Shown here piece after piece: positions 11,432 to 62,267 of a stretch of 64,000 nt of DNA. Made by a program: the position numbers and the translations under genes. Each line of letters starts with the position of its first letter. Position 1 is the first letter of the stretch. Below the pieces are notes generated by a model. It did no database searches, was not told where the DNA came from, and worked only from the letters and a program-made list of their open reading frames with translations. This DNA is from Macrostomum lignano (Eukaryota): the NCBI GenBank assembly GCA_002269645.1, contig NIVC01002064.1, forward strand, positions 1 through 64,000. The letters are read 5' to 3'.

Positions 11432-11742
11432 TTCAACTTCATCAAATCTAATAATTTTAATTTCCTGTCTATTTTTGCGTTTCAACAGGTTTAACTTCCA
11501 AGCCAGGAAATTCGTTATAATTAAAGTAACTCAACCCAGCACAGCATGGAGAAGTTTTTCTTTCGGATTGCGACTTCGTAATCGGATTCCGAAGTCAAAA
11601 AAATTTTTGAAAGAGGCTTTTAATATTACCTGATATGAAAGCGGGAAATAAGTGTGCAACTCATTCATGCAACTCATTCAGGGAAGCATGCAATGGAGCT
11701 TCCGGACTTTCTCAGTTGCAAACTGCTGCTGGCTATAAGTAA

Positions 11743-11985
11743 TGTCTGTCTGTTTACGATCGTCTGTGTCTGTCTGTTTGTCTGTCTGTGTGTCTGTGTG
11801 TCTGTCTGTCTCTGTCTGACTTAGTGTCTGTCTGTCTGTCTGTCTGTCTGTTTACGATCGTCTGTGTGACTGTCTGTCTGTCTGTTTACGATCGTCTGTG
11901 TGACTGTCTGTCTGTCTGTCTGTTTACGATCGTCTGTGACTGTCTGTCTGTCTGTTTACCATCGTCTGTCTGTCTGTCTGTCTGG
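11743..11985. repeat. (GTCT)n microsatellite interrupted by TTACGATCG
   Basis: Direct reading. Confidence 0.9.
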
Positions 11986-36219: not shown

Positions 36220-36279
36220 GGCTAAGCATGAATTACGGCAAATATTGTTTAATTATCATTTATCATTAATCATAAAGTT

Positions 36280-36345
36280 GTGGGTAAACGGCAGGAGTAA
36301 CTATGACAGTATTAAGATAAGTAAATGCTTTGTCATCTAATTAGT
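36280..36345 (+). other. 28S rRNA-derived fragment, copy B, ~60 bp upstream of the adaptor ATG
   Basis: Ungapped 55/66 match to the same LSU segment: flanks 26/28 and 21/23, centre 8/15. Confidence 0.85.
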
Positions 36346-36349
36346 GCAC

Positions 36350-39300: not shown

Positions 39301-42300
39301 TTATATAGGCCTATAAAACTACTTAAAGTAAGCATATAGTATGCAGGGCCCCTGCCGTTTTTCTATAAAAATAGTTACCAATTAGTTGAACTTGAATGTA
39401 TGGCAAAACTAAGACGCAATTTCTTTTGTTTTAATACTCATATTTTTCATATTATTTTGCGTGAATATATTTTTGTTTTAATCTACGAGTAAAAGTAGTA
39501 TAAATAGAAGCAAATTTGGCAGAAGGAGAACCAACCTTGCACATTGCGGTTCACTAACAAAATAGTTGATAACGAATAGTAAGAGTTCCGAGAAAATAAG
39601 AATTGAAAAAGTGTTTTCTGTGTTAATTCCTTTTAAGAAGTAAGAGCGAAATAGATTGAAATGTATACAGTACATACTATTGAGAAGCAGCAGTATTGAG
39701 TAGTAAAAGAATACGAAGTAGATCTGAAGTGATACATGTAAGAATAACTGGAGGCTGTGACCCTCTGATCTCGGTAACACCTATAGGACTTGCAAAGTAC
39801 ATAAAATACATATACCAGTATAGCCAATGTACCACTTAGGCCAAAAGTATAGTAAATGCTACTGGAATCCGAATATACACTACCAGAATAACAGAGGAAT
39901 AAAATCTTTAAAGGCTAATAGTTTCCAAGAATAATACTCAGACTAAATACTTAGACTAAATACTAAGATATATACTCAGATCAATTCTAAGAAACATTTA
40001 TTGGATTATTATAAGATTGATAAACTCATAATTTATTAATAGGATAATCCTGGTGCCAGCTACCAACATTTATAAAATAGGAGTTTAGCCCTTTGACAAC
40101 TTTAGTGATAGCTGTGGAATCATTTGAAGAGACAGAAGAATCAGCCCTTTGACAATTTCAGTAAGAGGAAACACCCCTGTGACAACGGTGGCAAGATAAA
40201 GACTAGGCAGAGGCTCAGAATTAGGACTTTATAAGACAGAGCCAAGAGGCCTAGTACAATAGAACGTGTAAAAGAATTACCTGTAACTTTTTTACTTAAA
40301 ACTCAAAAGCTAATTAGTAAATGATAAAATAGAAATAAAAAGATTTTTTCAATAGCATTAGCAGGTGCAGTAGAAAATTATGAAAGATTGGCAAAGAAGT
40401 GAATCAAAGCAATTGATACTCACGTGCAAGCAATAAAGTTCACAATTTCAATTTAATATTAAAGTTCATTAGTAAGAAGTTGATATATTTCTATGATCAT
40501 TGTCATAAACAATGAGATTAATTAGGCATTTATATAAATTTAAATTTATTTGTAATGTTGTAACATCTTATCAGACTTATATATTTCTTCTTTCTTTGTG
40601 TCTTTTGTCATTAACAATGAATTTGTCATTAACTCACAAAATTATTAATGCAAATTTGCTAATCTATTAGTTCAAAAAAATCTTAATGATAGTCCATTAA
40701 TGTTAATAAAAAATCTTAATGTTCATTAATGCTTATTAACAGATTAATGCTTATTAAATGGATTGGTGCCCAACACTGGCCACAGTTGCTTTTAAGCATT
40801 ACTTTATTACTATGACTAGGCTATGCTACTAGTACAAAATCACTTGTTATATTATAGTACATTGTAGGCCTATCATACATTCTTTATACAATCATTTAAA
40901 TATAAGCCTAAATATATATAGATAAAACATTTTGTGATAGGCATCTTTCTTCTCTGTATTATAAATTCCACTGATGCCACTAGCTGTGACAGGGTACTTT
41001 CCTCTGTCTTTTTAAATATCCTATAAGCTATAAGCCTACTAAATCCTATTATCCTATTAATCTATAGTTTTAGTAATATTCTAGTAGCATTCTTAGTAGC
41101 ATTCTGTTAATGTTCTTAATAGCATTCTGGTAGCATTTGTATACTATGTGGCCTAAGTGGTCTTATTGGTATATATACTGTTTTCCAGTCTGGGCATTAT
41201 CAAGATTAGAGGGTCTCTTAACCTTCTAGCAAGTTCTTTGAATGTTTGAAACACTCTTAGTTATCCCACTAGTAAAATGATTAGTGCTTTAAAAATCTAA
41301 GAATGATTTAATGAACACTTATTATTAGACTAGCTATAAACAATCTAATCACATGAGCAAGTTGGTTCTCTCTCTAAACTTTGCTCCTATTTATACTAAT
41401 TGAAACAAGTATATATTTTTTATTATTTGATTTTATTATTATTTGACAATTTGAAAATATTTAGAAAAGTAAAACATAATAAATTTTTCACATGTAAGTT
41501 TGAATTTAAGCTTTCTAAGAAACCCTATTACAATTTTTGCTGAAGTGCAATTTTCCCGAAATGGCTAGGTCTACTTGTTAGCACTTGTTATTTGCATGGT
41601 ACCATATAAATATTTATTGTCATTATTTATACACTATGCCTAACTAAAATAAATACTATAGTTTTATATATTGTATAGTGCTTATGGCCATGCTCCAGTT
41701 ACATTTGACCACAAATCCATCCTTTTGAAATGGAATGAGTCATATTCTTATTATTTTCCTTTGGAACACTCTGTATTTTATATTATTAATAGTAAAAGCT
41801 AATAGAAAAATTCTTAGCTATAAACACAAATCATACCTAAACTACTCATTAATAGAAATAAAAGATAAAGGGACAAATATTGAATAATCCCTAATAAGAA
41901 AAATAATTAATAATTATGGTAGTAATACCATAATAATTATGGTAATACTATAATGATACCAGAGAAGGTTGCATATTTTGCTATTTGAATTGATGGATAT
42001 CAGTTTGCCAATCAGGTTTTCAGCAGAAAGGCATTTGGTAAATTGACTTTTGGCAAAAAGGTTTGGCAAATTGTCTAGTATTCTATTATCTTATAGCCTA
42101 TATATATACTACACTTATAACTATATCTAGTAAAAGTAGAACTATCATATAAAATATTAAGATGATCTATAATATTATTAAATTCTATTTTTAGAGCCAA
42201 GTTTTTTCATGACATGATTATGAATATACTTTGTTGAATTGATAGCCAATTAGCGATTTACCAAAAATATATATAAGTAGACTTAGGCCTAAGGAGAATT

Positions 42301-45000
42301 TAAGCAAATAAGTAAGAATAATATAAACAATACATAAAAGTAATTCCCAAAAAGTATAGATAGTGAAACCCCTTTAAATGGTACAAAAATAATAGGTAGG
42401 TCAAACTGAATTTAGCCTAAATTCCTTTACAATTAACTAATTTAATTATCTACCCTATTAATTTATTACAAACTTAGTCAATTGACAATAAGACATAGGC
42501 CATTCAAACTAGCTAACTAACAAACCTTATCACATAATAAATCTTGTTGGTAGACCTATCTATACTAATAGATAATCTAAAGTGCATAGATGATAGCTCT
42601 TTTCCATGTAGCAATACTTTGCACACAAATAATATAATGTTGCTCAATGGTATCAATCACTTTATCTTAGTCATGATGCTATGGTGAAGTTCTATTCAAT
42701 GTAAGCATATAGTTATCTTAATTAAATAGCTTTTTACTTTATTTGGTTAATCTGATATTCAAAATGTTCCTGCCAGTTTTTCTAATATTGCTATTTAGTT
42801 AGCATTAATTGCCATTTGCAGATTTCAAATTGGCTACCATTTGGGCTAGGTAGATGGCTATAGCAATGCTAAAGGGCTACTATAGGCTATAGCTACAATT
42901 CCCTTGGCATTGCTATTGAGTATTGATTTTGTAGAAGCTGTTCCCTTGCCAATTTTGGTTGGAGCAGCATTTTTTAGGATCACTGCCTAACCTAACCTAT
43001 ATTTTGAACACTTTCAGCATGCCAAGATTTGTTTGGACTCCATTGTTACTAACCATTGGCAATAGGAACCTTTATAGGGCTAGCCTCTGAAGCAATGCCA
43101 ACATATTGAATTGCAGCATAGCCTAATAGATTTAATGATACAAATGCAACTTTGCCAAACTTTAGGTTCCAATTTCCATTAGAAAGAGTGTACAAAAATG
43201 ATAGGCAAAAGCTTAGGATACTACCATCTTTTCGTTTGGGTAGATAGTGTGTTCGATCACATTTCCATTGATATCAATCATTGTGCCAGCTTGCTGAGGT
43301 ATTAGTTTAGTGGGCAGAGCATTTCAAATTTGATAATTAGTCATGCATCATATCACTGAGTAGCCTGTTATATAGAAGCAAAATTTAAAAACATGTCAAA
43401 ATAGTGATAGACTACAATCTATACTTTGATTATATTAGTTACTTATATAGATATGGAATAAAACATTTTTAAATATAACAAGAAACCTAACTTCTTTTAC
43501 CATTTCCTAACTTGTTATAACAAATATTCTTTTACTAATAGAGCAATTTGGAACTACTGACAATAGCCATGACAAGTCCAATTTTCCAAGAGTTGTTCAA
43601 CTCTCGCAAGAATAAGGAGCTTAATATCAAAGCCATATGCCTAAACCCTAATAATGAAAATATGCAAATATTTTAGTTTTAGTTTGAAAAATTGAGAATT
43701 AGTTCTTATAAAAGATTGATTAAGTCTTTTTTAAATATTGATACTATATATCATGTGCTTATTCAATGAAACTACAAGTAAAACCATAATAGTTGATTTA
43801 TAAATAAAGTAAATTATAGAAAATCTATATTATATAAATTGGATTGCATACTTTATCATACCTGGCATTTGGCTACTCTATATCAAATTCTTTGTTCCAA
43901 TTGTTTTGCAATTGTGTTGCTTTTCCTAGAAATATAGGAATTTTGTCTTTCTTATATTTGGAAAAATCATATGTGGCAATATTCATATTGATAATTGCTT
44001 TGATTCTAGTGCTATATAAGACTAGGGTTCACTTCCTTTGGCCAATTGAATGTTGCTAGCTCCAACCTTGAATACCCATTTGCTATCCCATTCTGAGTTC
44101 TTACTAGACTTATCTATCAAATTAATATAGTAGAACTATTATAATACATTAAGGAAACCAAGCATATATTTTGCCAAACTTCAAAGCTATCCCCTTTGCT
44201 TGCCCCTTGTACCTTTGGTCTTTTCCTTTAAGAATATGCCCTACCTCAAAAATTTCTTGTTATGCCAATGCACTTTTGTTGCTATAGACTGCAAATTGGC
44301 CAGGTCTAGCCAAAATTTCAAAAAACTTTTTGCACTCAAGCTTTTATAAAAACTTTCTTATCAAAGCTTATATATAAGCTTCCTGCTTTAAAATTTAGAC
44401 TAGACCATGTGATTGGAGTCTCATATGCACTTGAAACATGCAGACATGATCTAGCAGTGGTAGATATACTAAAGTATAATTTATTATGCATAAAATGCAT
44501 TTTTTTATCTACAAGTATCCAAGGTAAATTATTATAATAATTATCTACAATGTCCAAGGTAAATGCACTTCAAGCACTTTCCTTATTCTTATTCCTATTC
44601 CATATTCCATATCCATATATTTGCAGCCAAATTTGTTACATTAGTATTCAATTAATAAACAAATTAAATAAAAATAGCAAACAATAAGTTTTGCATAAAA
44701 AGTTAAAAGTACACCATAGAAATACTATTATCAGATATTTTCATGGACTATATACAAGCATATATGGCTTTTAATTATTGTATTAAAAGAGACTGTAAAA
44801 AGTAAAAGCAAAAATACTAAATTGTGTAGCATCATAGTTCCTTTTCTTTTTTATACAAGTCTGATAATATCCTAAAGTGGTATTATATAATATTGATTAG
44901 ATAATCTTGATAATCCTAATCTTGATAACCTTGATATTAGATCATCTTCCCTAGGATTATAATGCTAAATATTCAGTGTCTCTATAGCAAAAATTACTTG
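36350..45000. other. AT-rich, strongly CpG-depleted block, probably decayed repeats
   Basis: No credible ORF. By eye only about 6 CG dinucleotides in 40321-45000, while GC, TG, CA and TA are abundant. Confidence 0.6.
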
Positions 45001-46194
45001 GTACTTAAAATTTCGTGATGAGCTGTTCATCTGGTCTCAGCTGCTCCAACTAATGAGCTTCTTAGTAATTTACCTCCCTATTATACTGCATTATTTAAAA
45101 GTACATGTTGGACTTAGCCTTAACTCCTATTGAAACTTGCTGAACTGCTCTGTAGAAATAAGATTCGCTTCTCTAATATTCGAGGCTGGGTCTTTGTGCT
45201 GCCAAAAACTTACTGTCAAAGATAATTTTTCACGAGTTGCCAGCTGAACATTCTTGCCTTCAAAGTATCCACTAGAAGCTTTAACTGTCTTGTCAGCGTA
45301 TTTAACACCTGAATCTCAGCTGCACACTTGTCCATCGACAGCTGCTCAGCAAGATTAGCCTGTCTGCAGATGTGAATTTTTCCTCTGCTGATTCACAGAA
45401 TGGCAGCGTCCGCAAAGGGTGACTAGATTGGCAAAAAAACGTTTCAGTATTCCAGCGTCCATATCATGCAAGAGCTGTCGGCACTTTTAATCAGATGGGC
45501 AGTAGGTCGACGCGCATCTTTAAAGTCATTTTTAGACAGCAGCTGTCAACAGATGCGTTTTTGTGAATTTTTTTGCAAGTCTTTTATACGATTTACACTT
45601 GCACTACTCAAACCTGGAGTAAATTTCACTTGGCTACTCAACAAATTGAAATTGGCACAGTGAAAGCTTCAATGGGCTGTGAGCACCTATCAAAGTTAAT
45701 AATTAATTCAAATTAGTCTTGCTAATGTTAGCACAAATTGAAAAGTAGAAGATGTACATCTATGTGGGTGACTGGTCTAATTGATATTAGTTTGTCTAAT
45801 GCTGTTGTGTCAATCAGTCTACTCTATTTGTTAAATAATTCATTTCCCATAAAACTGATTGCATACGTTGATTAAATCGCGATTATGACTCAGCTCACAA
45901 AATGCTCATGCAAAATTCTGATAAAAAATAATTAACTTACAAGCTGATTTTATTAAAAGTCGTAAGTTCCTTGTGAGATCAGAAATGTTCAAAGGCTAAA
46001 TACAATAATCAATCTCTTTAATTGAATATTTGAAACGCACTGGCTAGTTATAATTAAATGGATTCGAATTGCAGCTTAGCACACGCTAAGCAGGCTGCTA
46101 AATTTTCTGGATTTCCTGTTAGTTTGAGCATCAATCACTCTCTGTGCAGCGGCGATTTCCTTATATGCCTCTCCTCTTCCCTCCCCCTGTGCCT

Positions 46195-46201: not shown

Positions 46202-46308
46202 ATTGAGTTAGTTGCTAGGGACAGGTGCTTAGCTAATAGCTTAGTTCGCACACCTTGTCGCCTTCATGCAACTGTTTTTTCTTCTTTCTGAAGCAGTTTC
46301 ATAGAATA

Positions 46309-48763
46309 ATGCATACTGAGGAGCAGACGCCACCAGCCGGCATAGCCCACTCCGGCAATGGCCATAGCAACGGCCCTAGCAACGGCGTCAGCAATAATAA
46401 AAACAACAGCGTTAAAAAGCATCGAAAGCAGCAACAGAGAAAGAAGAAGCAACAACAGCAACAGCAGCAGTGCCGAGTGTGCCATAGGCGCGCATCTGGG
46501 CATCACTATAGCGCGCTGACCTGCGAAGCTTGCAAAGCGTTCTTTAAGCGCACTGTGAACTCCTGTCTGACCTACTTCTGCCCGGTGCAGCGCTCCGGCT
46601 CCCGCTGCCCGGTGCGCGTGCGCAACAAGCGGCAGTGCCCTGCCTGCCGGTGGAAGCGCTGTCTCGAGGCTTCTATGCAGGTTCGAGTCTGTTATTGGCA
46701 TATTTCTCAATAGTGTACTTCTCGATTTCAAAATCGGTGTATTAGGATTTCAAAATCGGTGTATTAGGATTTCAAAATCGGTGTATTACGATATCAAAAG
46801 CGGTGTATTAGGATTTCAAAAGCGGTGTATTAGGATTTCAAAAGCGGTGTATTAGGATATCAAAAGCGGTGTAGTAGAATTTCAAAATTGGTGTAGTAGA
46901 ATTTCAAAATCGGTGTATTAGAACTTCAAAATCGGTGTATTAGGATTTCAAAAGCGGTGTATTAGGATATCAAAAGCGGTGTATTAGGATTTCAAAATCG
47001 GTGTATTAGGATTTCAAAATCGGTGTATTAGAACTTCAAAATCGGTGTATTAGAATTTCAAAAGCGGTGTATTAGGATTTCAAAAGCGGTGTATTAGGAT
47101 ATCAAAAGCGGTGTATTAGGATTTCAAAATCGGTGTATTAGAACTTCAAAATCGGTGTATTAGAATTTCAAAAGCGGTGTATTAGGATATCAAAAGCGGT
47201 GTATTAGGATATCAAAAGCGGTGTATTAGGATATCAAAAGCGGTGTATTAGGATTTCAAAAGCGGTGTATTAGGATTTCAAAAGCGCCACTCCAAATCAA
47301 CATTGGCAGATCCGTCTTGTCCGCTCTGCATCGCCCGTCCAGCCGCCTTTGCCGCCATCGTCAGTGATCACCGCACCAGCCGACAACGCAGCCTCCAACG
47401 GCGCGAACTCAAGTGTCAGCAACGCGGCGTTTTCAATGGCTTCCCGCCAGCCGCCAGCGTACATCCAGCAGCTGATAGCCGAGTCGGCCGCCAAGGAGTC
47501 GGAGGCGGCTGCCGCGCTGGCTGCCGCCGCTGAAGCCGGCCTAGGCAGAGAAATTGTTCAGCAGCTGCGCTGCACCTGCATCGACGAGCTGGTGAGCGAC
47601 ATCGACATGTCGGACTCCAGCCTAGCCGGCGTAGCCAGCCAATCAGAGCGGCACGCCTTGCTGTTGGGCATCTGCTTCAACAAGCACGCCAACGATCTGG
47701 TGGCTTTTGCCAAGCATTTGACCGGATTCGCTGCCCTGCCGATGCCAGATCGGGTACAAATGCTGCAGCTGCGCTGGCTTAACCTGGTCGCTTGGCAGGT
47801 GAGACCTTGGCTGCGTGGGAGGGGATTAGTACTTTGCGGACTGCTGTAAATTAGCAAGATTAAGAGTGGAACAGAGTGAGCACTGAGCAAGATTAAGAAT
47901 GGAACAGAGTGAGCACTGAGCAAGATTAAGAATGGAACAGAGTGAGCACTGAGCAACATTAAGAATGGAACAGAGTGAGCACTGAGCAAGATTAAGAATG
48001 GAACAGAGTGAGCACTGAGCAAGATTAAGAATGGAACAGAGTGAGCACTGAGCAAGATTAAGAATGGAACAGAGTGAGCACTGAGCAAGATTAAGAATGG
48101 AACAGAGTGAGCACTGAGCAAGATTAAGAATGGAACAGAGTGAGCATTATAAGCAAAAAGCAAAAAGCCAAGCGCCTGCATTCCTCAATCCAGATCGTCT
48201 ATCAATCCACGCCCTACGACGGCCACCTAAAGCTGTGCCGCAATTTCTGGATTCGCGACGATGCGCCCTCCCTGTTCGCCGGCCGGATTCCCGTTAGAAG
48301 CGGCCGCCTGCTGCGCTGCTTTGCCAATTTGCTGACTCGCCTAGGCCTCACCGAGGCTGAGTTCCTACTATTGAAGGCTGTCTTTTTGTTGGAGGCGCCG
48401 CCGTCTTATAACTGGGAGGATCGGCCAGCCATTGACAGGCTGCAGGAGCGCTACATTGCCGAGTTCCGCTCCGTTTGTCCCAGCGCCACCCGCCGGGCCC
48501 GTCTGCTATCGCTGGACGGCCTGCTAGAGGCTGTCCGAGTTCTCACGGTTGGCTACTGGTTGAGAGTGCTGCAGCGTACGCCATACACTCCACCACCCTT
48601 AGTAACGGAGATGCTCACCTTCTCGTTAGGCAATGTGCCGCACGTGTCCTCAGATCTGTCCGATACTGCCCAGCCAAATCAGGCCAATCAGGATGTACAA
48701 GTTGTTACTGAGGCCTCGTCATCTGGCTGCGGCGGTCAGCTTGGGATCAACTCGATTCCGTAG
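46309..48763 (+). CDS. ERR: Estrogen-related receptor-like nuclear receptor (NR3B-like), 3 exons, 476 aa
   Basis: Exons 46309-46680, 47310-47798 and 48194-48763, all phase 0. First C4 finger C-X2-C-X13-C-X2-C with the ERR-type P-box CEACKAFFKRT. Ligand-binding domain motifs AFAKHLTGF, IVYQSTPYDGHL (ERR IVYRSLPYDDKL), EFLLLKA, AIDRLQE and AF-2 LVTEML. Confidence 0.88.
46728..47285. repeat. 22-bp minisatellite (TTTCAAAATCGGTGTATTAGGA), receptor intron 1
   Basis: Direct reading. Confidence 0.95.
47850..48145. repeat. 33-bp minisatellite (TGAGCAAGATTAAGAATGGAACAGAGTGAGCAC), receptor intron 2
   Basis: Direct reading. Confidence 0.95.
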
Positions 48764-48824: not shown

Positions 48825-49415
48825 CACAGGTACCCATCTACGGATATCCACGCATACCCATGTACGGATATCCACGCATACCCATCTACGGATATCCACG
48901 TGTACCCATCTACGGATGTCAACGCATACCCATGTACGGATATCCGCGTGTACCCATCTACGGATATCCACGCATACCCATCTACGGATATCCGCGTGTA
49001 CCCATCTACGGATATCCACGTGTACCCATCTACGGATGTCCACGCATACCCATCTACGGATATCCGCGTGTACCCATGTACGGATATCCACGTGTACCCA
49101 TCTACGGATATCCACGCATACCCATCTACGGATATCCACGTGTACCCATCTACGGATATCCACGTGTACCCATCTACGGATGTCCACGCATACCCATCTA
49201 CGGATATCCGCGTGTACCCATCTACGGATATCCACGTGTACCCATCTACGGATATCCACGCATACCCATCTACGGATATCCACGTGTACCCATCTACGGA
49301 TATCCGCGTGTACCCATCTACGGATGTCCACGTGTACCCATGTACGGATATCCGCGTGTACCCATCTACGGATATCCACGTGTACCCATCTACGGATGTA
49401 CGCATCTACGCATCT
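48825..49415. repeat. 24-bp minisatellite (GTACCCATCTACGGATATCCACGT) just 3' of the receptor stop
   Basis: Direct reading. Confidence 0.95.
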
Positions 49416-50479: not shown

Positions 50480-52620
50480 CTCTCCCTGCTTTCTTCCCTT
50501 ACCATCTCCCCTCTCCCTTCCCCTCTCATATCTCCCCTCTCTTCCCCTCTCATATCTCCCCTCTCCCTTCCCCTCTCATATCTCTCCCCTCTCTTCCCCT
50601 CTCATATCTCCCCTCTCCCTTCCCCTCTCATATCTCCCCTCTCTTCCCCTCTCATATCTCCCCTCTCCCTTCCCCTCTCATATCTCCCCTCTCTTCCCCT
50701 CTCATATCTCCCCTCTCCCTTCCCCTCTCATATCTCCCCTCTCTTCCCCTCTCATGTCTCCCCTCTCTTCCCCTCTCATGTCTCCCCTCTCCCTTCCCCT
50801 CTCATATCTCCCCTCTCCCTTCCCCTCTCATATCTCCCCTCTCTTCCCCTCTCATATCTCCCCTCTCTTCCCCTCTCATATCTCCCCTCTCTTCCCCTCT
50901 CATATCTCCCCTCTCTTCCCCTCTCATGTCTCCCCTCTCTTCCCCTCTCATGTCTCCCCTCTCCCTTCCCCTCTCATATCTCCCCTCTCCCTTCCCCTCT
51001 CATATCTCCCCTCTCTTCCCCTCTCATATCTCCCCTCTCTTCCCCTCTCATATCTCCCCTCTCTTCCCCTCTCATGTCTCCCCTCTCTTCCCCTCTCATG
51101 TCTCCCCTCTCCCTTCCCCTCTCATATCTCCCCTCTCCCTTCCCCTCTCATATCTCCCCTCTCCCTTCCCCTCTCATATCTCCCCTCTTCCCCTCTCATA
51201 TCTCCCCTCTCTTCCCCTCTCATATCTCCCCTCTCTTCCCCTCTCATATCTCCCCTCTCTTCCCCTCTCATATCTCCCCTCTCTTCCCCTCTCATATCTC
51301 CCCTCTCTTCCCCTCTCATATCTCCCCTCTCTTCCCCTCTCATATCTCCCCTCTCCCTTCCCCTCTCATATCTCCCCTCCCTTCCCCTCTCATATCTCCC
51401 CTCTCTTCCCCTCTCATATCTCCCCTCTCTTCCCCTCTCATATCTCCCCTCTCTTCCCCTCTCATATCTCCCCTCTCTTCCCCTCTCATATCTCCCCTCT
51501 CCCTTCCCCTCTCATATCTCCTCTCTCTTCCCCTCTCATATCTCCCCTCTCCCTTTCCCTCTCATATCTCCCCTCTCCCTTCCCCTCTCATATCTCTCCC
51601 TCTCTTCCCCTCTCATATCTCTCCTCTCTTCCCCTCTCATATCTCCCCTCTCTTCCCCTCTCATATCTCTCCTCTCCCTTTCCCTCTCATATCTCCCCTC
51701 TCCCTTTCCCTCTCATATCTTCCCTCTCCCTTTCCCTCTCATATCTCCCCTCTCCCTTTCCCTTTCATATCTCCCCTCTCCCTTTCCCTCTCATATCTCC
51801 CCTCTCCCTTTCCCTCTCATATCTCCCCTCTCCCTTTCCCTCTCATATCTCCCCTCTCCCTTTCCCTCTCATATCTCCCCTCTCCCTTTCCCTCTCATAT
51901 CTCCCCTCTCCCTTTCCCTCTCATATCTCCCCTCTCCCTTTCCCTCTCATATCTCCCCTCTCCCTTTCCCTCTCATATCTCCCCTCTCCCTTTCCCTCTC
52001 ATATCTCCCCTCTCCCTTTCCCTCTCATATCTCTCCTCTCTTCCCCTCTCATATCTCCCCTCTCTTCCCCTCTCATATCTCTCCTCTCCCTTTCCCTCTC
52101 ATATCTCCCCTCTCCCTTTCCCTCTCATATCTTCCCTCTCCCTTTCCCTCTCATATCTCCCCTCTCCCTTTCCCTCTCATATCTCCCCTCTCCCTTTCCC
52201 TCTCATATCTCCCCTCTCCCTTTCCCTCTCATATCTCCCCTCTCCCTTTCCCTCTCATATCTCCCCTCTCCCTTTCCCTCTCATATCTCCCCTCTCTTCC
52301 CCTCTCATATCTCTCCTCTCCCTTTCCCTCTCATATCTCCCCTCTCCCTTTCCCTCTCATATCTCCCCTCTCCCTTTCCCTCTCATATCTCTCCTCTCTT
52401 CCCCTCCCCTCTGCTTCAATTCTCCCTCTTCCCTCTTCCCTCTTCCCTTCCCTCTCTTCCTTTCCCCTCTCTTCCCCTCCCTGTTCCCTCTCCCCTCCCA
52501 TCTCTTCCTTTTCCCTCTCTTCCCCTCCCTTTTCCCTCTCCCCTCCCATCTCTTCTTTTTTCCTCTCTTCTCTTCCAGTCTTCCCTCTACCCTGTTCCTC
52601 TCTCCGTTTCCCCTCTCTCT
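50480..52620. repeat. 24-25-bp pyrimidine-rich satellite (TCTCATATCTCCCCTCTCTTCCCC), ~2.1 kb
   Basis: Direct reading. Confidence 0.95.
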
Positions 52621-53324: not shown

Positions 53325-56300
53325 ATGTCAACTGGATTAAACCGGTTGGAGGACAAGTTTCGATTGGCGTTTGCCGGACTGGGCGAGATGCTCAACAGGT
53401 CTGACGGTGAGCCACTTTGATGCAGGATGCTATCTCCAGCAGGGATGCTGGGTATTGAGGGTCAGGAGGGAATCTCATGCTGGATACTGAGGGCGGTCAG
53501 GAGGGAATCTCATGCTGGATACTGAGGGCGGTCAGTAGGGAGTCTCATGCTGGATACTGAGGGCGGTCAGGAGGGAATCTCATGCTGGATACTGAGGGTG
53601 GTCAGGAGGGAATCTCATATTAGATACTGAGGGTGGTCAGGAGGGAGTCTCATGCTGGATACTGAGGTTGGTCAGGAGGAAGTCTCATGCTGGATACTGA
53701 GGGTGGTCAGGAGGGAGTCTCATGCTGGATACTGAGGTTGGTCAGGAGGGAATCTCATTCTGGATACTGAGGGTGGTCAGGAGGGAATCTCATGCTGGAT
53801 ACTGAGGGCGGTCAGTAGGGAGTCTCATGCTGGATACTGAGGGTGGTCAGTAGGGAGTCTCATGCTGGATACTGAGGGCGGTCAGTAGGGAGTCTCATGC
53901 TGGATACTGAGGGTGGTCAGGAGGGAATCTCATGCTGGATACTGAGGGTGGTCAGGAGGGAATCTCATATTAGATACTGAGGGTGGTCAGGAGGGAGTCT
54001 CATGCTGGATACTGAGGTTGGTCAGGAGGGAATCTCATTCTGGATACTGAGGGTGGTCAGGAGGGAATCTCATGCTGGATACTGAGGGCGGTCAGTAGGG
54101 AGTCTCATGCTGGATACTGAGGGTGGTCAGTAGGGAGTCTCATGCTGGATACTGAGGGCGGTCAGTAGGGAGTCTCATGCTGGATACTGAGGGTGGTCAG
54201 GAGGGAATCTCATGCTGGATACTGAGGGTGGTCAGGAGGGAATCTCATATTAGATACTGAGGGTGGTCAGGAGGGAGTCTCATGCTGGATACTGAGGTTG
54301 GTCAGGAGGAAGTCTCATGCTGGATACTGAGGGTGGTCAGGAGGGAGTCTCATGCTGGATACTGAGGTTGGTCAGGAGGGAATCTCATTCTGGATACTGA
54401 GGGTGGTCAGGAGGGAATCTCATGCTGGATACTGAGGGCGGTCAGTAGGGAGTCTCATGCTGGATACTGAGGGCGGTCAGTAGGGAGTCTCATGCTGGAT
54501 TCTGAGGGCGGTCAGTAGGGAGTCTCATGCTGGATACTGAGGGTGGTCAGGAGGGAATCTCATATTAGATACTGAGGGTGGTCAGGAGGGAGTCTCATGC
54601 TGGATACTGAGGTTGGTCAGGAGGAAGTCTCATGCTGGATACTGAGGGTGGTCAGGAGGGAGTCTCATGCTGGATACTGAGGTTGGTCAGGAGGAAGTCT
54701 CATGCTGGATACTGAGGGTGGTCAGGAGGGAATCTCATGCTGGGTGTCAAGATTGAGGTGAAGCGTCCTACTGAATGAGTCAATATGGGAATCAGCGAGC
54801 TAGCAGACTGACTTCCCAAGCAACCAAATCTCACCCCCAAGCAGCTCGCCGTCAGCAGCAGCAGGGCGCCGAACCCGTCTCGGTGCTGCGCGGGCCCCGC
54901 AAGCCGGGCGTCGGACGCCGCGACGGCCCAATCAGCCGCATCCTGGAGGACCTTGTGCACTTTAATAACAACCTGACACCGACTGCCAAGGACCCGGCTC
55001 TCTGGTGGTGCCCGCCCGCCGCCGCCGCCGGCTCCTGCGTCACCTTCGGTGAGCTCAGCCAGCGGGCCAACTTTTTGGCGCGCTGCCTGTTGCGCACCCT
55101 GCGCTCGCACGGCATCGACGTTTGCGGCGGCGGCGGCGGCGGCGGCGCGGCCCTCTGCGTCGTCATGCCATGCGGGCCGGACCGCCTGGCGCTGGAGCTG
55201 GCGGCGCTGAAGCTCGGCCTGCCGCTACTGGGCCTGGAGCAGCCGGAGGACGGCGACTTTGCCCGAATGCTGGTCGGCCTGCAGGCAGCGTTGAAGGCGG
55301 CGAAGCCGGTGGCCCTGGTGGCAGCGGCCTGTGCAGCGGCTCGCCTGCCCGAGCTTCGCAGCCTGGCGCCCGCGCTGGCCCTGGCGCTCCAGTTCGAGGA
55401 TCTGGCCGAGGCCGGCGAAGCTCTGGGCCTGTCCGACCGCGACCTGCAGGACGAGGAGCGGCCGGTGGTGGTGGCCGACGCGGACTCGGCCTGCTGCGCG
55501 GTGGCCATTGTGGTTGAATCCATGGGCGGCCGGTTGGTCAGCCTGACCCAGGGCCAGCTGCTGGCTGCGGCCAACTGGCTGCGGGACACCCTGCCCTGGC
55601 AGTGCCACGAGGTGCTGTGGATTGGCGACTCCTGTGACAGCGCCTACTGGCGGGTGCACGCGCTAAGCGCCCTGCTGAACGGCATCCCGCTGCTGATGTG
55701 CCCAGGCTGCGGCCGCTGGGACGCCTGGCTGAAGCTGGTCAGGGCTCAGTGAGTCTTTGGCAAGGCCTGCGGGCCGGTGTGGTTGACTGTTGATGGAGAA
55801 TTACAGTTAGCTAATGGGGGAATTACAGTTGGCTAATGTGGAATTATAAAAGCCCATGAGAAACTACAGATAGTTTAAAACAATATTTTACAGTTATTGA
55901 ATGACAGTTGATGGGGAATGAATGAAAGTTGATGGGGAATGAATAACAGTTGATGGGGAATGAATGAAAGCTGATGGGGAATTAATGACAGTTGATGGGG
56001 AATTAATGACAGTTGATGGGGAATTAATTAAAGTTGATGGGGAATGAATGACAGTTGATGGGGAATGAATGACAGTTGATGGGGAATTAATGACAGTTGA
56101 TGGGGAATTAATGACAGTTCATGGGGAATTAATGACAGTTGATGGGGAATTAATGACAGTTGATGGGGAATTAATGACAGTTCATGGGGAATTAATGACA
56201 GTTCATGGGGAATTAATGACAGTTAATGGGGAATTAATGACAGTTGATGGGGAATGAATGACAGTTGATGGGGAACGTCAGACCATTGACGTCATTGACT

Positions 56301-59300
56301 GTTACCTAAGAGTGACATCGCCGTTCATTCTGCCATCATCTGTTTGCCCGCCATCGAAATGCAGCTACGCCACCAGGCTGGTGGCCAGCCCCAGCTTCCT
56401 GACGGATCTGCTCAGCCACACGGCCAACCGGCCGGCTGCCCGCGCCCAGCTGGCCTCGCTAGAGACCGTCCTGGTCATCGGCGAGCCGCTGTCGCCGCGC
56501 ACGGCAGATGAATTCTACAGGCAGCTGGGCGCCGGCCGCACCCTCGGCTGCCTGTACGCCAGCGTGGAGGCCTGCGGAGCCGCCGCCTACGGCATCTACC
56601 GCTGCCCGGCCGACGTGGCCGAGGTCCGACAGCTGTCCGACAGTCTGCTGGCTCTGTCCGAGGCCGCTCCAAATGTCCGGCTGGCCGTCACCGACCAGCG
56701 CGGCAGGCCGCTGCCGGCCGGGCAGCTCGGCGAGATCCGCCTGCTGCTGCTCAACGACGTCGACTCCGACGACGGCAGGGACATCGGGTCGGAGGCCGCT
56801 TGGGCGTCGGCGCTGCGGACTGGCGATCTCGGACAGGTGCCGGGTGCCACCGGCCACCTGCTTTGCTACGGCCGGTCCGACCCGGCCGCTCTGGCCGCCG
56901 TTGAAGCCGCCGCCGGCATCGGCTGGCAACTGCTGGCGGCGCCGGGTAGCGCCGGGCGCCTATTGGCGATGGCACCAGCGCCGGAGTGTCGGCGCTTCTC
57001 TACGGCGCCGCTGATGCGTGAAATTTCTATGAAATTTGAGATTAAAGGTTTGGGAGAATTTTTGTAGTCTTTTTGTGACCCCGTGACCTCCTCATTTTAT
57101 CGCCTGACCTCTCCAATTTGGCGCCCTGTGACCTCAGTTTGGCGTCCTATGACCTCAGTTTGGCGTCCTATGACCTCAGTTTGGCGTCCTATGACCTCAG
57201 TTTGACACCCTGTGACCTCTGTTTGGCACCCTGTGACCTCAGTTTGGCACCCTGTGACCTCAGTTTGGCTTCTTATGACCTCAGTTTGGCACCCTGTGAC
57301 CTCAGTTTGGCGCTCTGTGACCTCAGTTTGGCGCTCTGTGACCTCAGTTTGGCGCTCTGTGACCTCAGTTTGGCTCCTTGTGACATTCCTAATTTGGCGT
57401 CTCGTGACCTTTATGTGTGCTTCCTATACGTAGACTTCCAATGTTACGTCATTTTTGCAACCTTCACTTGTCCAACCCGCCTGCCCAGTCGGTGTCCTCG
57501 CCGACTGCTCCGCGGTGCCCCGACGCCGTCTGTGGGAGCTGCCGGATCTGCGGGCCGTGCGCCAGCCCGCCTTCGCCGATGACGACCTGGGCGGCGGCGG
57601 CAGTGACGGCGGCAAAGGCGGCAAAGAAGCTGAGGACAGCGGTGGCAGCGACGCCTGGACGGCGGCAACTCGGCAGCTGGTGGAGGCGGCAGCGACGCCC
57701 GCTGGCGGGAAGCGGCCAGCCGGAGGCGGCGGTCTCGGCCGGCTGCTGAGCTGCCCGGAGCCGCCGCCGCAGGCTGACAGTCGCTGGCCGGCCTGGGAGA
57801 GCCACCTGCTGCACACGGAGGCCACCTACCGGATGGAGGGCCCGGACTTCGCCGGCAGCGTCGGCAGCTTTCGCCTGCTGGACGTCGGCGGCTCCGGCCG
57901 GGTGGCCGCCCTGGTGGAATTCCGCGTCATCGAGACCGGCATCGCCGGAGCCGCCGCCGACGCTGGCGAGGCCGGCTTCGACTCCGCCGCCTGCGCTGCT
58001 GCCGCGAAGGCTGAGCAGCAGCAGCAGCTTTCGCCGGCCTCGGAGGAGCTCGGCTCCGTCTGCCGGGTTCTTCGAGTTCGATTTCCGAGCTTCGCTGGCG
58101 GCGGCGGCAGCGGCGGCGTCAGGGCGCTTCGCTTCCTGCGGCTGGCCGACCTGGCGGAGCACCTGCTACTGCACTGCGCCCAGCTGCTTGGCTGCGGCCT
58201 GGCGATCCGCGTGGCGGACGATTTGGTTACTCAGGTTGGGCAGAAACTGGGACTGGGAATTCTCTCGATTGCCTGCCTATCCGCTCACGGCGTGCTTGGG
58301 GATGTGCTTGTCAGTCTCCGGGGAGCTGTCTCAAAATTCGACATTTAGATGGAATTTCCTCACCCAAAATGCCCCAACCCGAAATTCCCCTAACCCGAAA
58401 TCTCCCCAACCCGAAATCCCCCTAACTCAAAATTCCATCCAACCCGAAATTCCCCCAACCCGAAACTCCCCCAACCCGAAACTCCCCCAACCCGAAATCC
58501 CCTAACTCAAAATTCCATCCAACCCGAAACTCCCCCAACCCGAAACTCCCCCAACCCGAAATCCCCCTAACTCAAAATTCCATCCAACCCGAAATTCCCC
58601 CAACCCGAAACTCCCCCAACCCGAAACTCCCCCAACCCGAAATCCCCTAACTCAAAATTCCATCCAACCCGAAACTCCCCCAACCCGAAACTCCCCCAAC
58701 CCGAAATCCCCCTAACTCAAAATTCCATCCAACCCGAAATTCCCCCAACCCGAAACCCCCCAACCGGAAACCCCGAACCCGAAATCCCTCTAACACAAAA
58801 TTCCATCCAACCCGAAATCCCCCAACCCGAAACTCCCCCAACCTTAAACTCCCCCAACCCGAAATTCCCCCAACCCGAAACCCCCCAACCCGAAACCCGA
58901 ACCCGAAATCCCTCTAACTCAAAATTCCATCCAACCCGAAATCCCCAACCCGAAACTCCCCCAACCCGAAACTTCCCCTAACTCAAAATTCCATCCAACC
59001 CGAAACTCCCCCAACCCGAAATCCCCCTAACTCAAAATTCCATCCAACCCGAAACTCCCCCAACCCGAAACTCCCCAACCCGAAACTCCCCCAACCCGAA
59101 ACTCCCCCAACCCGAAACTTCCCCTAACTCAAAATTCCATCCAACCCGAAACTCCCCCAACCTGAAACTCCCCCAACCCGAAACTCCCCCAACCCGAAAC
59201 TTCCCCTAACTCAAAATTCCACCCAACCCGAAACTCCCCCAACCCGAAACTTCCCCTAACTCAAAATTCCCCCAAGCCGAAATTCCTCTCCCACTCAACC

Positions 59301-59620
59301 CGCAGACCCTGTGCCAGGAGCTCGGCTACAGGGTGGCCTCAACCCGCCAGCCGGTCTCCATGGGTCCGAATTTCGACGCCGTCTCCAACGGCTGTTTCAG
59401 CAGGGCGGCCGGCATTGGCGGCAGCCGCAGCAGCGCCAGCAGTCGCAGTAGCAGCGTTAGCAGCAGTGGCGGCGGCGGCGGCGGCGGCGGCCGAGGACGC
59501 GGTCAGGCCTGGGAGGCGGCCACCGTGTCGGAGCTGCACGCCCAGTGCCGAAGCTCCGCCGCGGTGCTGCTAGTTCGGTCGGTGCCCCGACTGACGTCCG
59601 AGGAGGCCTCCAGCCAGTGA
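53325..59620 (+). CDS. ebony: Ebony-type NRPS homologue (degenerate adenylation domain + amine-binding GNAT/aaNAT-like C-terminal domain; carrier domain not found), 5 exons, ~907 aa
   Basis: Exons 53325-53406 (phase 1, less certain; alternative ATG at 54775), 54821-55748, 56365-57017, 57489-58234 and 59306-59620 join in frame (2724 nt). Ebony-like blocks: SVLRGP, TFGELSQRANFLAR, AKPVALV, RLVASPSFL, GEPLS...F...G.RTL..LYASVE, RPLPAGQLGEI, RTGDLG, and C-terminal EHLLL.CAQ..G..LAIRVADDLVTQ.LCQELGY. Confidence 0.82.
53455..54745. repeat. 35-bp minisatellite (GGTCAGGAGGGAATCTCATGCTGGATACTGAGGGT), first intron of the Ebony-like gene
   Basis: Direct reading. Confidence 0.95.
55900..56277. repeat. 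21-bp minisatellite (ATGACAGTTGATGGGGAATTA), Ebony-like intron 2
   Basis: Direct reading. Confidence 0.9.
57108..57385. repeat. 21-bp minisatellite (TGTGACCTCAGTTTGGCGCCC), Ebony-like intron 3
   Basis: Direct reading. Confidence 0.9.
58360..59285. repeat. C-rich array of ~16-bp units (AACCCGAAACTCCCCC) with periodic TAACTCAAAATTCCATCC, Ebony-like intron 4
   Basis: Direct reading. Confidence 0.9.
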
Positions 59621-61434: not shown

Positions 61435-62267
61435 ACTGACTGACTGACTGACTGACTGACTGACTGACTGACTGACTGACTGACTGACTGACTGACTGAC
61501 TGACTGACTGACTGACTGACTGACTGACTGACTGACTGACTGACTGACTGACTGACTGACTGACTGACTGACTGACTGACTGACTGACTGACTGACTGAC
61601 TGACTGACTGACTGACTGACTGACTGACTGACTGACTGACTGACTGACTGACTGACTGACTGACTGACTGACTGACTGACTGACTGACTGACTGACTGAC
61701 TGACTGACTGACTGACTGACTGACTGACTGACTGACTGACTGACTGACTGACTGACTGACTGACTGACTGACTGACTGACTGACTGACTGACTGACTGAC
61801 TGACTGACTGACTGACTGACTGACTGACTGACTGACTGACTGACTGACTGACTGACTGACTGACTGACTGACTGACTGACTGACTGACTGACTGACTGAC
61901 TGACTGACTGACTGACTGACTGACTGACTGACTGACTGACTGACTGACTGACTGACTGACTGACTGACTGACTGACTGACTGACTGACTGACTGACTGAC
62001 TGACTGACTGACTGACTGACTGACTGACTGACTGACTGACTGACTGACTGACTGACTGACTGACTGACTGACTGACTGACTGACTGACTGACTGACTGAC
62101 TGACTGACTGACTGACTGACTGACTGACTGACTGACTGACTGACTGACTGACTGACTGACTGACTGACTGACTGACTGACTGACTGACTGACTGACTGAC
62201 TGACTGACTGACTGACTGACTGACTGACTGACTGACTGACTGACTGACTGACTGACTGACTGACTGA
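61435..62267. repeat. Uninterrupted (ACTG)n microsatellite, 833 bp
   Basis: Direct reading; no variant unit seen. Confidence 0.97.

What the first reader, a model, noticed from the sequence alone, without database searches (positions are those of the whole stretch)
53325..59620. Ebony-type NRPS turned probable pseudo-enzyme: no P-loop, no catalytic lysine, no carrier domain
Seen: an intact ~907-aa spliced frame colinear with Ebony. Where Ebony has AIVLYTSGSTGVPKGVRL this reads AIVVESMGGRLVSL; YGSTE is YASVE; NGKVDR is CSAVPR. The ~100-residue thiolation domain with GGNS is replaced by a short Gly-rich linker before the amine-binding C-terminal domain. Known: Ebony and the schistosome NRPS join beta-alanine to biogenic amines, the schistosome product beta-alanyl-tryptamine is a male pheromone, and the A3 loop, A10 Lys and phosphopantetheinyl Ser are required. 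Inference: a retained non-catalytic paralogue that may bind or sense amines or beta-alanyl conjugates, regulate an active NRPS, or act in trans through its C-terminal domain.
Basis: partly seen in the sequence, partly recalled or inferred. Interest (0 to 1): 0.8.

Follow-up and report, generated by a model that had tools for sequence, protein, structure and literature searches.

The report
Catalytically dead Ebony-like flatworm gene
A flatworm (Macrostomum lignano) gene descended from the Ebony family of small peptide-making enzymes has lost every catalytic part yet still keeps an open, spliced reading frame, so it is probably a non-catalytic "pseudo-enzyme" of unknown role and modest interest.

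Summary
The observation largely holds. Window 53325-59620 (+) is the Macrostomum lignano gene BOX15_Mlig000265g3. It has five GT-AG exons and 909 codons, and it matches a GenBank model that was built from RNA-seq.

Residues 40-500 fold confidently as an adenylation core. The catalytic parts are gone:
- The P-loop (A3), the A4 Asp, the A8 hairpin and the A10 Lys are lost.
- No carrier domain or C-terminal adenylation subdomain is detectable.
- Only the last third (~50 residues plus a terminal strand) of the Ebony C-terminal domain is recognisable.

The adenylation core alone cannot prove Ebony ancestry. Three other lines support it:
- An N-terminal family signature.
- The C-domain remnant.
- A phase-0 intron at exactly the position of the only intron in nemertean and annelid ebony-like genes.

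The gene does not look like a decaying pseudogene:
- The frame has no internal stops, against 9-20 in the other frames.
- GC3 is 85%.
- Its ~99% identical homeologue shows 12 synonymous against 6 non-synonymous differences (omega ~0.18). That copy, as assembled, also carries two 1-bp frameshifts.

Still open: any active paralogue, orthologues, the expression site and the function. This is a new variant of a known kind, of moderate interest.

The parts
53325..53406 (+). Exon 1 (codons 1-27 plus 1 nt). It encodes an N-terminal helix that Ebony proteins lack.
   Evidence: Same start as GenBank protein P0001. Donor GT.
54845..55748 (+). Exon 2. An alternative NAGNAG acceptor at 54842 adds one Ala. 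It encodes residues 28-328, including the N-terminal SVLRG signature and the A1-A4 region.
   Evidence: 100% identical in L004.
56365..57047 (+). Exon 3 (residues 329-556). It carries the A5, A7 and A8 relics.
57489..58234 (+). Exon 4 (residues 557-805). It holds the A10 relic, the Gly/Ala-rich low-confidence region and the start of the C-domain remnant.
   Evidence: One synonymous difference from GenBank at 57508.
59306..59620 (+). Exon 5 (residues 806-909 plus TGA). It holds the end of the C-domain remnant, the Ser/Gly-rich insertion and the terminal strand.
54880..56878 (+). Adenylation-core (ANL N-terminal domain) fold, residues 40-500. It spans intron 2.
   Evidence: Pfam AMP-binding 69.9 bits (cut-off 29.9). 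Ebony-family HMM 100.7 bits. AF2 pLDDT 80-97. Foldseek against NRPS A domains E ~2e-22, TM to N-domain-only structures ~0.8.
54880..54957 (+). N-terminal Ebony-family signature SVLRG...ISRILEDLV (residues 40-65).
   Evidence: HMM of the family N-terminus: 11.8 bits, E 1e-5. 0 of 3000 shuffles reach it; their maximum is 4.9.
55489..55542 (+). A3 (P-loop) relic ACCAVAIVVESMGGRLVS, where the family has (L)YTSGSTGxPKGV.
   Evidence: It lies inside continuous exon 2, so no alternative exon can restore it.
55618..55662 (+). A4 relic WIGDSCDSAYWRVHA, where the family has KTxLxFVDSxxE. The invariant Asp aligns with Tyr295.
   Evidence: The register could be off by 1-2 residues.
56543..56587 (+). A5 relic LGCLYASVEACGAAA, where the family has NxYGSTExxGDVT. 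Tyr, Ser and Glu are kept. Gly, Thr and GDVT are lost.
56810..56833 (+). A7 motif retained: ALRTGDLG (family YRTGDxG).
56864..56896 (+). A8 relic CYGRSDPAALA. GRxD is kept. The QVKIRGxRV hairpin is deleted.
57044..57532 (+). Presumed A10 position KVGVLADCSAVPRRRL (it spans intron 3). The family GK(I/V)DR Lys aligns with Ala565/Pro.
   Evidence: MAFFT colinearity only. No HMM signal for this subdomain.
56879..58120 (+). Residues 501-767 (spans intron 3): a Gly/Ala-rich region with no confident fold. It takes the place of the A subdomain, the carrier domain and the N-terminal part of the Ebony C domain.
   Evidence: AF2 pLDDT below 50 with both alignments. No PP-binding or AMP-binding_C match. 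The 'GGNS' column lands on GPDF or on GGGG depending on the alignment.
58139..59344 (+). Remnant of the Ebony C-terminal domain, residues 774-818: RLADLAEHLLLHCAQLLGCGLAIRVADDLVTQ|TLCQELGYRVAST. Intron 4 splits it in phase 0.
   Evidence: HMM E 0.002. 0 of 3000 shuffles. hhalign P 0.009. AF2 alpha-beta-alpha-beta at 768-821 with pLDDT 78-86. The intron position and phase match Tubulanus, Owenia and Capitella ebony-like genes.
59354..59554 (+). Ser/Gly-rich low-complexity insertion, residues 822-888.
   Evidence: Sequence. pLDDT below 50. The GGC repeat length differs between the copies.
59555..59617 (+). C-terminal strand and helix (residues 889-909). Probably the last strand of the Ebony C domain.
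   Evidence: AF2 strand E891-897 with pLDDT ~87. The homology is inferred.
53460..54743 (.). Intron 1 tandem array (35-bp unit, ~37 copies). It is 560 bp longer here than in GenBank NIVC01000441.1.
58362..59286 (.). Intron 4 tandem array (16/65/145-bp periods). Introns 2 (55900-56275) and 3 (57117-57384) hold 21-bp arrays.

Best explanation
This is the M. lignano gene BOX15_Mlig000265g3. It is a lineage-specific, fast-evolved descendant of the Ebony family of one-module NRPSs (adenylation domain, carrier domain, Ebony-type C-terminal domain).

**What is lost.** All steps of the Ebony cycle have been disabled:
- ATP cannot be held by a P-loop.
- The Asp and Lys that position the amino-acid substrate are gone.
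- The A8 hairpin and the mobile A subdomain are unrecognisable.
- There is no carrier domain or phosphopantetheine Ser.
- The acceptor half of the C-terminal domain is missing.

**What remains.**
- A well-folded adenylation core (residues 40-500).
- About 270 residues of Gly/Ala-rich, probably disordered sequence.
- A ~50-residue alpha-beta-alpha-beta remnant of the Ebony C domain.
- A Ser/Gly-rich insertion and a final strand.

**Reading.** The gene is transcribed and spliced, and its frame and amino-acid sequence are under purifying selection. It most likely acts as a non-catalytic protein (a pseudo-enzyme). The A-core would serve as a scaffold or ligand/partner-binding module, and the disordered tail as a linker or interaction region.

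**Shown:** identity, gene structure, Ebony ancestry, loss of motifs and domains, ORF maintenance, omega below 1.

**Inferred:** that a protein is made, that it is non-catalytic in vivo, and any binding or scaffold role.
For: **Gene model**
- It matches the GenBank protein.
- That annotation is purely RNA-seq/transcriptome based.
- The exons are identical in an independent record, L004, apart from one synonymous change.

**A-core**
- Pfam AMP-binding 2.3e-19.
- NCBIfam's best match is the NRPS-type TIGR01733 at 43.6 bits. Acyl-CoA ligase models reach at most 19 bits.
- AF2 and Foldseek agree on the fold.

**The comparison family is true Ebony**
- The P0027 C-terminus hits the Drosophila Ebony structure 6DYM at 1.2e-14.
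- The family profile retrieves insect ebony at ~800 bits.
- NCBI names these proteins 'ebony-like'.

**Ancestry**
- The best whole-database hits are Ebony-like proteins.
- N-terminal signature, E 1e-5.
- C-domain remnant.
- A phase-0 intron sits at the same aligned residue as the only intron of the Tubulanus and Owenia genes, and as the implied intron in Capitella. Chance of this is about 4/2727.

**Loss of catalysis**
- P0001 keeps 58 of 149 family-conserved positions. A3, A4, A8 and the A10 Lys are gone.

**Constraint**
- 0 stops in frame; shuffles average 16.
- 12 synonymous against 6 non-synonymous differences, omega 0.18, p 5e-4.
- In the C-terminal half, codons 500-909, the count is 6 synonymous to 2 non-synonymous.
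- dN 0.30% against 1.06% in non-coding sequence.
Against: - The selection test rests on only 18-19 substitutions between ~99% identical copies. It therefore speaks only for the recent past.
- The homeologous copy (L001) carries two 1-bp frameshifts and a stop at codon 149 as assembled. One copy may already be dead, or the assembly may be wrong.
- No orthologue exists in 1.84 billion representative proteins.
- Nearly half of the protein has no predicted fold.
- The A-core alone cannot be placed inside the Ebony clade.
- There is no protein-level or expression-site evidence, and no partner or ligand is known.
Confidence: 0.55

Rival explanations
1. A gene on its way out. After duplication, or after the pathway was lost, the Ebony-like gene lost its function. 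It is still transcribed but makes no useful protein, and the open frame is a leftover.
For: - All catalytic motifs and two to three domains are lost.
- Low-complexity GGC/AGC expansions vary between the copies.
- The homeologue has two frameshifts as assembled.
- No orthologues were found.
- About half of the protein is unfolded in the models.
Against: - The protein is only ~20% identical to its family (members of different phyla within the family share roughly 30-40%), yet it has 0 stops in 909 codons. The other frames have 9-20.
- All four introns keep GT-AG.
- GC3 is 85% against GC2 of 56%.
- Omega is 0.18, and the C-terminal half is also rich in synonymous changes.
- In the homeologue, the segment between the two frameshifts is still stop-free in the original frame.
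Confidence: 0.27
2. It is still an enzyme, using the ANL core in a non-canonical way. For example, it might work without a P-loop, or in trans with a separate carrier protein or an active NRPS.
For: - The A-core fold is well kept.
- The A7 TGD motif, the A8 GRxD and the A5 Tyr/Glu are retained.
- There is evidence of purifying selection.
Against: - The P-loop, the A4 Asp, the A8 hairpin and the A10 Lys are all lost together.
- From established ANL/NRPS enzymology, each of these is needed for adenylation or thioester formation.
- The A subdomain that carries A8-A10 has no detectable fold.
Confidence: 0.06
3. It is not Ebony-derived. It would be a degenerate member of another ANL lineage (an acyl-CoA synthetase or another NRPS), possibly acquired from GC-rich bacteria.
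For: - HMMs built from bacterial NRPS or acyl-CoA-ligase hits score the A-core as well as Ebony HMMs do: 93-111 bits against 69-103.
- The NJ tree puts it on a long branch outside the Ebony clade.
- The CDS GC of 71% is above that of neighbouring genes, at 56-60%.
Against: - Those bacterial sequences were pre-selected as the best hits and share the Ala/Gly/Arg-rich composition.
- The gene has four spliceosomal introns.
- The phase-0 intron is shared with spiralian ebony-like genes.
- It has the N-terminal family signature and the Ebony C-domain remnant.
- Its length and domain order match Ebony.
- The high GC3 follows the same trend as its neighbours.
Confidence: 0.06
4. Annotation artefact. 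Unrecognised or alternative exons would restore the P-loop or the carrier domain.
For: The large repeat-filled introns could in principle hide small exons.
Against: - The A3 relic lies in the middle of a continuous 904-nt exon.
- tblastn with seven Ebony proteins finds nothing else in the 64-kb window on either strand.
- The introns are almost wholly tandem arrays.
- The model equals the RNA-seq-based GenBank model.
Confidence: 0.03

Closest known systems
Drosophila Ebony (beta-alanyl-bioamine NRPS; C-terminal domain structure PDB 6DYM)
   Same: - Single-module layout and similar length (909 against ~879 aa).
- NRPS-type adenylation core.
- N-terminal S(I/V)L(K/R)G...FE signature.
- The A7 TGD and A8 GRxD motifs.
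- The last alpha-beta-alpha-beta of the C-terminal domain.
   Different: - No P-loop, A4 Asp, A8 hairpin or A10 Lys.
- No detectable A subdomain or carrier domain.
- About two-thirds of the C-terminal domain is missing.
- Long Gly/Ala and Ser/Gly low-complexity insertions.
- Only 58 of 149 family-conserved positions are kept.
Spiralian ebony-like genes (Tubulanus polymorphus XP_074657403.1 = P0027; Owenia fusiformis P0042; Capitella teleta P0188)
   Same: - They are the best database relatives.
- They share a phase-0 intron directly after the ...VT(K/C/Q) residue of the C domain.
   Different: - Those genes have one intron and all the catalytic motifs.
- The Macrostomum gene has three further introns (codon 27 phase 1, codon 328 phase 2, codon 556 phase 1), all filled with tandem repeats. 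It has none of the catalytic motifs intact apart from A7.
Flatworm NRPS of Schistosoma mansoni and Schmidtea mediterranea, which make beta-alanyl-tryptamine (PMC11214079)
   Same: Same phylum, and described there as similar to Drosophila ebony. They are presumably the nearest functional relatives.
   Different: These are active enzymes with reproductive signalling roles.
Pseudo-enzymes in general (for example pseudokinases)
   Same: The fold is retained, the catalytic residues are lost, and there are signs of purifying selection.
   Different: No binding partner, ligand or phenotype is known. The protein is so far confined to one species, and a large part of it is probably disordered.
AASDH / ACSF4-U26, the other animal NRPS-like beta-alanine-activating protein (PMC10531068)
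   Same: An animal protein with an NRPS-type adenylation domain.
   Different: - AASDH has a different C-terminal architecture (from general knowledge; not examined here).
- It was not seen among the top hits whose names were checked.
- The shared intron and the C-domain remnant point to Ebony, not AASDH.

Membership tests
Ebony-type beta-alanyl-bioamine NRPS (as a working enzyme) | Adenylation domain with intact core motifs A3 (P-loop), A4 Asp, A5, A7, A8 and A10 Lys | tested here: not met
   A3, the A4 Asp, the A8 hairpin and the A10 Lys are lost. A5 is partly kept. A7 is kept.
Ebony-type beta-alanyl-bioamine NRPS (as a working enzyme) | Carrier (PP-binding) domain with the GGxS phosphopantetheine Ser | tested here: not met
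   No Pfam PP-binding match at E up to 1. No hit with the family T-domain HMM using --max, or with hhalign. AF2 pLDDT is below 50. The aligned position reads GPDF or GGGG.
Ebony-type beta-alanyl-bioamine NRPS (as a working enzyme) | Complete Ebony C-terminal (amine-selecting, 6DYM-type) domain | tested here: not met
   Only residues ~768-821 and 891-897 are recognisable. There is no direct PDB hit to 6DYM.
Ebony-type beta-alanyl-bioamine NRPS (as a working enzyme) | Conjugates beta-alanine to biogenic amines | not testable with these tools
   This needs biochemical assays.
Ebony gene family (descent, not activity) | Family-specific sequence features outside the generic A-core: the N-terminal signature and the C-domain segment, in colinear order | tested here: met
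   N-terminus 11.8 bits, E 1e-5, 0 of 3000 shuffles. C-domain segment E 0.002, 0 of 3000 shuffles. hhalign P 0.009.
Ebony gene family (descent, not activity) | Shared intron position and phase with family members | tested here: met
   A phase-0 intron follows ...VTQ in P0001 and ...VTK/VTC/VTQ in Tubulanus, Owenia and Capitella.
Ebony gene family (descent, not activity) | The A-core groups with Ebony in a phylogeny | tested here: inconclusive
   In the NJ tree the distances are saturated (~2 substitutions per site) and bootstrap support is 2-4%. Group HMMs do not discriminate.
ANL superfamily (Pfam PF00501 AMP-binding fold) | Pfam match above the gathering score, and the ANL N-terminal domain fold | tested here: met
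   69.9 bits against a cut-off of 29.9. Foldseek E ~2e-22, TM ~0.8 to N-domain structures.
Pseudo-enzyme | Homologue of an enzyme with catalytic residues missing, yet under purifying selection | tested here: met
   Motif loss. ORF maintenance. Omega 0.18 with p 5e-4, but from only 18 substitutions. dN is below non-coding divergence.
Pseudo-enzyme | Expressed as a stable protein with a non-catalytic role | not testable with these tools
   There is only indirect RNA evidence: the GenBank models of this assembly derive from RNA-seq.
Pseudogene | Frame-disrupting mutations or lost splice sites | tested here: not met
   There are none in the window copy or in L004. The homeologue L001 does carry two 1-bp indels as assembled. 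Whether these are real or assembly errors cannot be told.

The most novel reading that the evidence does not exclude
Macrostomum keeps an Ebony-derived dead enzyme as a dedicated binder or sensor. For example, the A-core pocket or the surviving cofactor-side remnant of the C domain could bind beta-alanyl-amine signals such as beta-alanyl-tryptamine, or it could regulate an active NRPS. That would link the protein to flatworm reproductive signalling.
Probability: 0.06. Interest if true: 0.75.

Novelty: new variant of a known kind. Interest (0 to 1): 0.38.

Why it matters
Ebony-type NRPSs have recently become important in flatworm biology, because their product beta-alanyl-tryptamine controls female maturation in schistosomes and planarians (PMC11214079). 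A member of this family that has lost all of its chemistry but is still kept as a coding gene would be the first candidate pseudo-enzyme of the Ebony lineage. It would offer a natural experiment on what an adenylation core can do without catalysis.

It also serves as a caution for annotation. The gene is labelled only 'AMP-dependent synthetase/ligase' or 'hypothetical', and homology transfer could wrongly count it as an NRPS. If it proves to be a slowly dying duplicate, it is of local interest only.

Tried and rejected
1. **Word-indexed protein searches.** Searches with the full protein and with alignment A1 were swamped by Ala/Gly-rich words. They returned actinobacterial NRPSs and missed even the 99% identical P0002, so they were useless for finding paralogues.
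2. **Search with the cleaned family alignment A2.** It confirmed that the family is Ebony. Only the best 120 of 2061 hits are listed and no flatworm is among them, so the question of an active Macrostomum paralogue stays open.
3. **NJ tree of A-cores and group-specific HMMs.** Neither can place the A-core. Distances are saturated and the bacterial hits are pre-selected for similarity, so the A-core was dropped as evidence for Ebony ancestry.
4. **HMMs for the A subdomain and carrier domain, and hhalign.** No signal. The MAFFT placements of 'GGNS' (on GPDF, on GGGG) are unstable and were not used.
5. **Hidden exons.** tblastn with seven Ebony proteins found none.
6. **Horizontal transfer.** Considered because of the 71% GC and the bacterial hits. 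Rejected on the introns, the shared intron position and the family-specific N- and C-terminal signals.
7. **Literature.** Nothing was found on this gene or on a Macrostomum NRPS. The Ebony C-domain structure paper is not held.
8. **Rfam.** Nothing in the window.


Full report
**What is there**

The region 53325-59620 on the + strand holds a five-exon gene. The exons are 53325-53406, 54845-55748, 56365-57047, 57489-58234 and 59306-59620. All introns are GT-AG, and a NAGNAG alternative acceptor lies at 54842.

Its 909-aa product is identical to GenBank 'hypothetical protein BOX15_Mlig000265g3' of the flatworm Macrostomum lignano. The same locus in GenBank contig NIVC01000441.1 (L004) has identical exons, apart from one synonymous C/T at 57508. 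Its intron-1 array is 560 bp shorter there.

GenBank gene models for this assembly were derived only from RNA-seq and transcriptome assemblies, with ORFs called by TransDecoder (PMC5730564). A spliced transcript with this structure therefore exists. Each intron is filled with its own tandem-repeat array.

**The adenylation core is real, and it is dead**

Fold evidence:
- Pfam finds only AMP-binding: 69.9 bits against a cut-off of 29.9. The match covers only the part of the profile after the P-loop.
- The best NCBIfam model is the NRPS-type amino-acid adenylation domain TIGR01733, at 43.6 bits. Acyl-CoA ligase models reach at most 19 bits.
- AlphaFold2 gives a confident ANL N-terminal domain for residues 40-500, with pLDDT 80-97 using a 96-sequence alignment.
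- Foldseek matches NRPS adenylation domains at E ~2e-22.

Motif comparison, using alignments with Ebony-family proteins:

| Motif | Ebony family | P0001 |
|---|---|---|
| A3 (P-loop) | (L)YTSGSTGxPKGV | VAIVVESMGGRLV |
| A4 | FVDS...E | SAYW...H |
| A5 | NxYGSTExxGDVT | CLYASVEACGAAA |
| A7 | YRTGD | LRTGD (kept) |
| A8 | GRxDxQVKIRGxRV | GRSDPAA (hairpin deleted) |
| A10 | GK(I/V)DR | SAVPR |

Of 149 positions that are at least 90% conserved in 109 full-length family members, P0001 keeps 58. Most of these are Gly, Pro, Leu or Trp, the kind of residue that holds a fold together. By established ANL/NRPS enzymology, losing the P-loop, the A8 hairpin and the A10 Lys together rules out the normal adenylation and thioester steps.

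**Beyond residue 500**

- No AMP-binding_C or PP-binding domain is detectable by Pfam, by family-specific HMMs run without filters or by profile-profile comparison.
- AlphaFold2 gives pLDDT below 50 for residues 507-767 with both alignments.
- Different alignments put the family 'GGNS' on GPDF or on a GGGG run. In neither case is there a Ser in a carrier-like context.
- The region is about 270 residues long, so it is not a 'short linker'.
- Of the Ebony C-terminal domain, only residues ~768-821 are recognisable. This is an alpha-beta-alpha-beta unit with pLDDT 78-86, and it includes ...LAEHLLLHCAQLLGCGLAIRVADDLVTQTLCQELGYRV. A last strand at 891-897 is also modelled.
- That segment scores E 0.002 against the family HMM and no shuffle out of 3000 reaches it. 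Against a 109-sequence HMM, one shuffle in 3000 does. hhalign gives P 0.009.
- A 67-residue Ser/Gly-rich insertion separates the two pieces.
- By GNAT topology (my inference), the surviving piece corresponds to the cofactor-side half. The half expected to hold the amine acceptor is the part that is missing.

**Is it really Ebony-derived?**

The comparison family is certainly Ebony:
- Its C-terminal domain hits the Drosophila Ebony structure 6DYM at 1.2e-14.
- Its profile retrieves insect ebony at about 800 bits.
- NCBI names the nemertean members 'ebony-like'.

For P0001 itself, the exhaustive search of 1.84 billion representatives gave Ebony-like proteins as the best non-self hits. The top one was P0003, at 3.4e-17 and 26% identity over residues 91-459.

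The A-core cannot settle the matter, however:
- In an NJ tree it sits on a saturated long branch.
- HMMs built from bacterial NRPS or acyl-CoA-ligase hits score it as well as Ebony HMMs do.

Three independent features do settle it in my view:
- The N-terminal family signature S(I/V)L(K/R)G...(L)H/S-R-I-(F/L)-E: E 1e-5, with 0 of 3000 shuffles reaching it.
- The colinear C-domain remnant.
- Gene structure. Intron 4 of the Macrostomum gene is in phase 0 directly after ...DLVTQ. The only intron of the Tubulanus (…NQVTK|DLAHLYFGYE) and Owenia (…HYVTC|DMAEHTFGY) ebony-like genes is in phase 0 at the same aligned residue. The Capitella model reads through a GTACGT donor at …NPVTQ, with the next exon downstream. 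Given four introns among 2727 possible sites, the chance of such a coincidence is about 0.0015.

No further Ebony-like coding pieces exist in the window.

**Decaying or retained?**

The reading frame:
- It has no internal stop in 909 codons.
- The five other frames have 9-20 stops, and composition shuffles average 16 and never reach zero.
- GC by codon position is 73/56/85%.
- At ~20% identity to its family, a neutrally drifting sequence would not have stayed open.

The homeologous copy on NIVC01000525.1 (L001; annotated as the 540-aa P0002):
- It is ~99% identical.
- The two copies differ by 12 synonymous and 6 non-synonymous substitutions. That gives dS 0.016, dN 0.003 and omega 0.18. The binomial test against the neutral 2.7:1 expectation gives p 5e-4.
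- The C-terminal half alone shows 6 synonymous to 2 non-synonymous, counting the L004 difference.
- Unique non-coding flanks differ by 1.06%, against a dN of 0.30%.

Against this, the homeologue as assembled carries a 1-bp deletion in exon 2 and a 1-bp insertion in exon 3, which give a stop at codon 149. Between these two sites the original frame is still stop-free. The assembly is PacBio-based, and 180 Mb of it lies in duplicated blocks at least 95% identical. I therefore cannot tell a real dead copy from an assembly error.

**Verdict**

Its description of the C-terminal part is too generous. The 'non-catalytic but retained' reading is the best supported (about 0.55). A gene in slow decay is the main rival (about 0.27).

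Three things are not supported: that it is a paralogue of an active Macrostomum NRPS, that it binds amines, and that it acts through its C-terminal domain. No orthologue, expression site, partner or ligand is known.

This is a new variant of a known kind, an Ebony-derived candidate pseudo-enzyme, and it is of moderate interest.

Noticed in passing
window 53460-54743, 55900-56275, 57117-57384, 58362-59286: Each of the four introns is almost entirely one tandem array, with a different unit in each (35 bp; 21 bp; 21 bp; 16/65/145 bp). The intron-1 array is 560 bp (16 units) longer in the window than in GenBank NIVC01000441.1.
   Followed up: partly
L001 (NIVC01000525.1) 5534-12723: A homeologous copy of the gene, ~99% identical. 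It has a 1-bp deletion in exon 2 (CCC to CC) and a 1-bp insertion in exon 3. The GenBank model (P0002, 540 aa) therefore starts in a wrong frame. These may be real inactivation or assembly errors.
   Followed up: partly
window 54842/54845: A NAGNAG tandem acceptor at exon 2 (cAG|CAG) gives 910- or 909-aa products. GenBank uses the downstream one.
   Followed up: yes
window ~46255-48763 (+): A nuclear hormone receptor gene (zf-C4 1.5e-19; weak ligand-binding domain match) lies directly upstream on the same strand. It also precedes the homeologous copy. The 'g3' in the locus name may mean the genes share one transcriptional unit.
   Followed up: partly
window 48830-49397: An ORF here hits Pfam Cornifin at 6e-25. 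It is the translation of a 24-bp tandem array, so it is almost certainly a repeat artefact and not a gene.
   Followed up: partly
window 29489-30220 (-) and 35165-35800 (-): Exons of a T-complex protein 11 (Tcp11, 1.2e-25) gene and of an SH3-domain protein (4.7e-14) lie on the minus strand.
   Followed up: no
window 50504-52406: A CT-rich 26-bp array of 76 copies with extreme strand skew (GC skew -0.84) lies just upstream of the gene. It also aligns to the homeologous locus (L001).
   Followed up: no
window 61435-62267: A perfect (ACTG)n microsatellite: 208 copies at 100% match.
   Followed up: no
window 36001-46000: A 10-kb AT-rich block (GC 28-33%) in an otherwise 44-62% GC window. No long ORFs or large tandem arrays were seen there.
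   Followed up: no
window 53325-59620 versus neighbours: The CDS is unusually GC-rich (71%, GC3 85%). Neighbouring coding exons are at GC 56-60% and GC3 60-75%. This fits the Ala/Gly/Arg-rich composition and the GGC-repeat expansions.
   Followed up: partly
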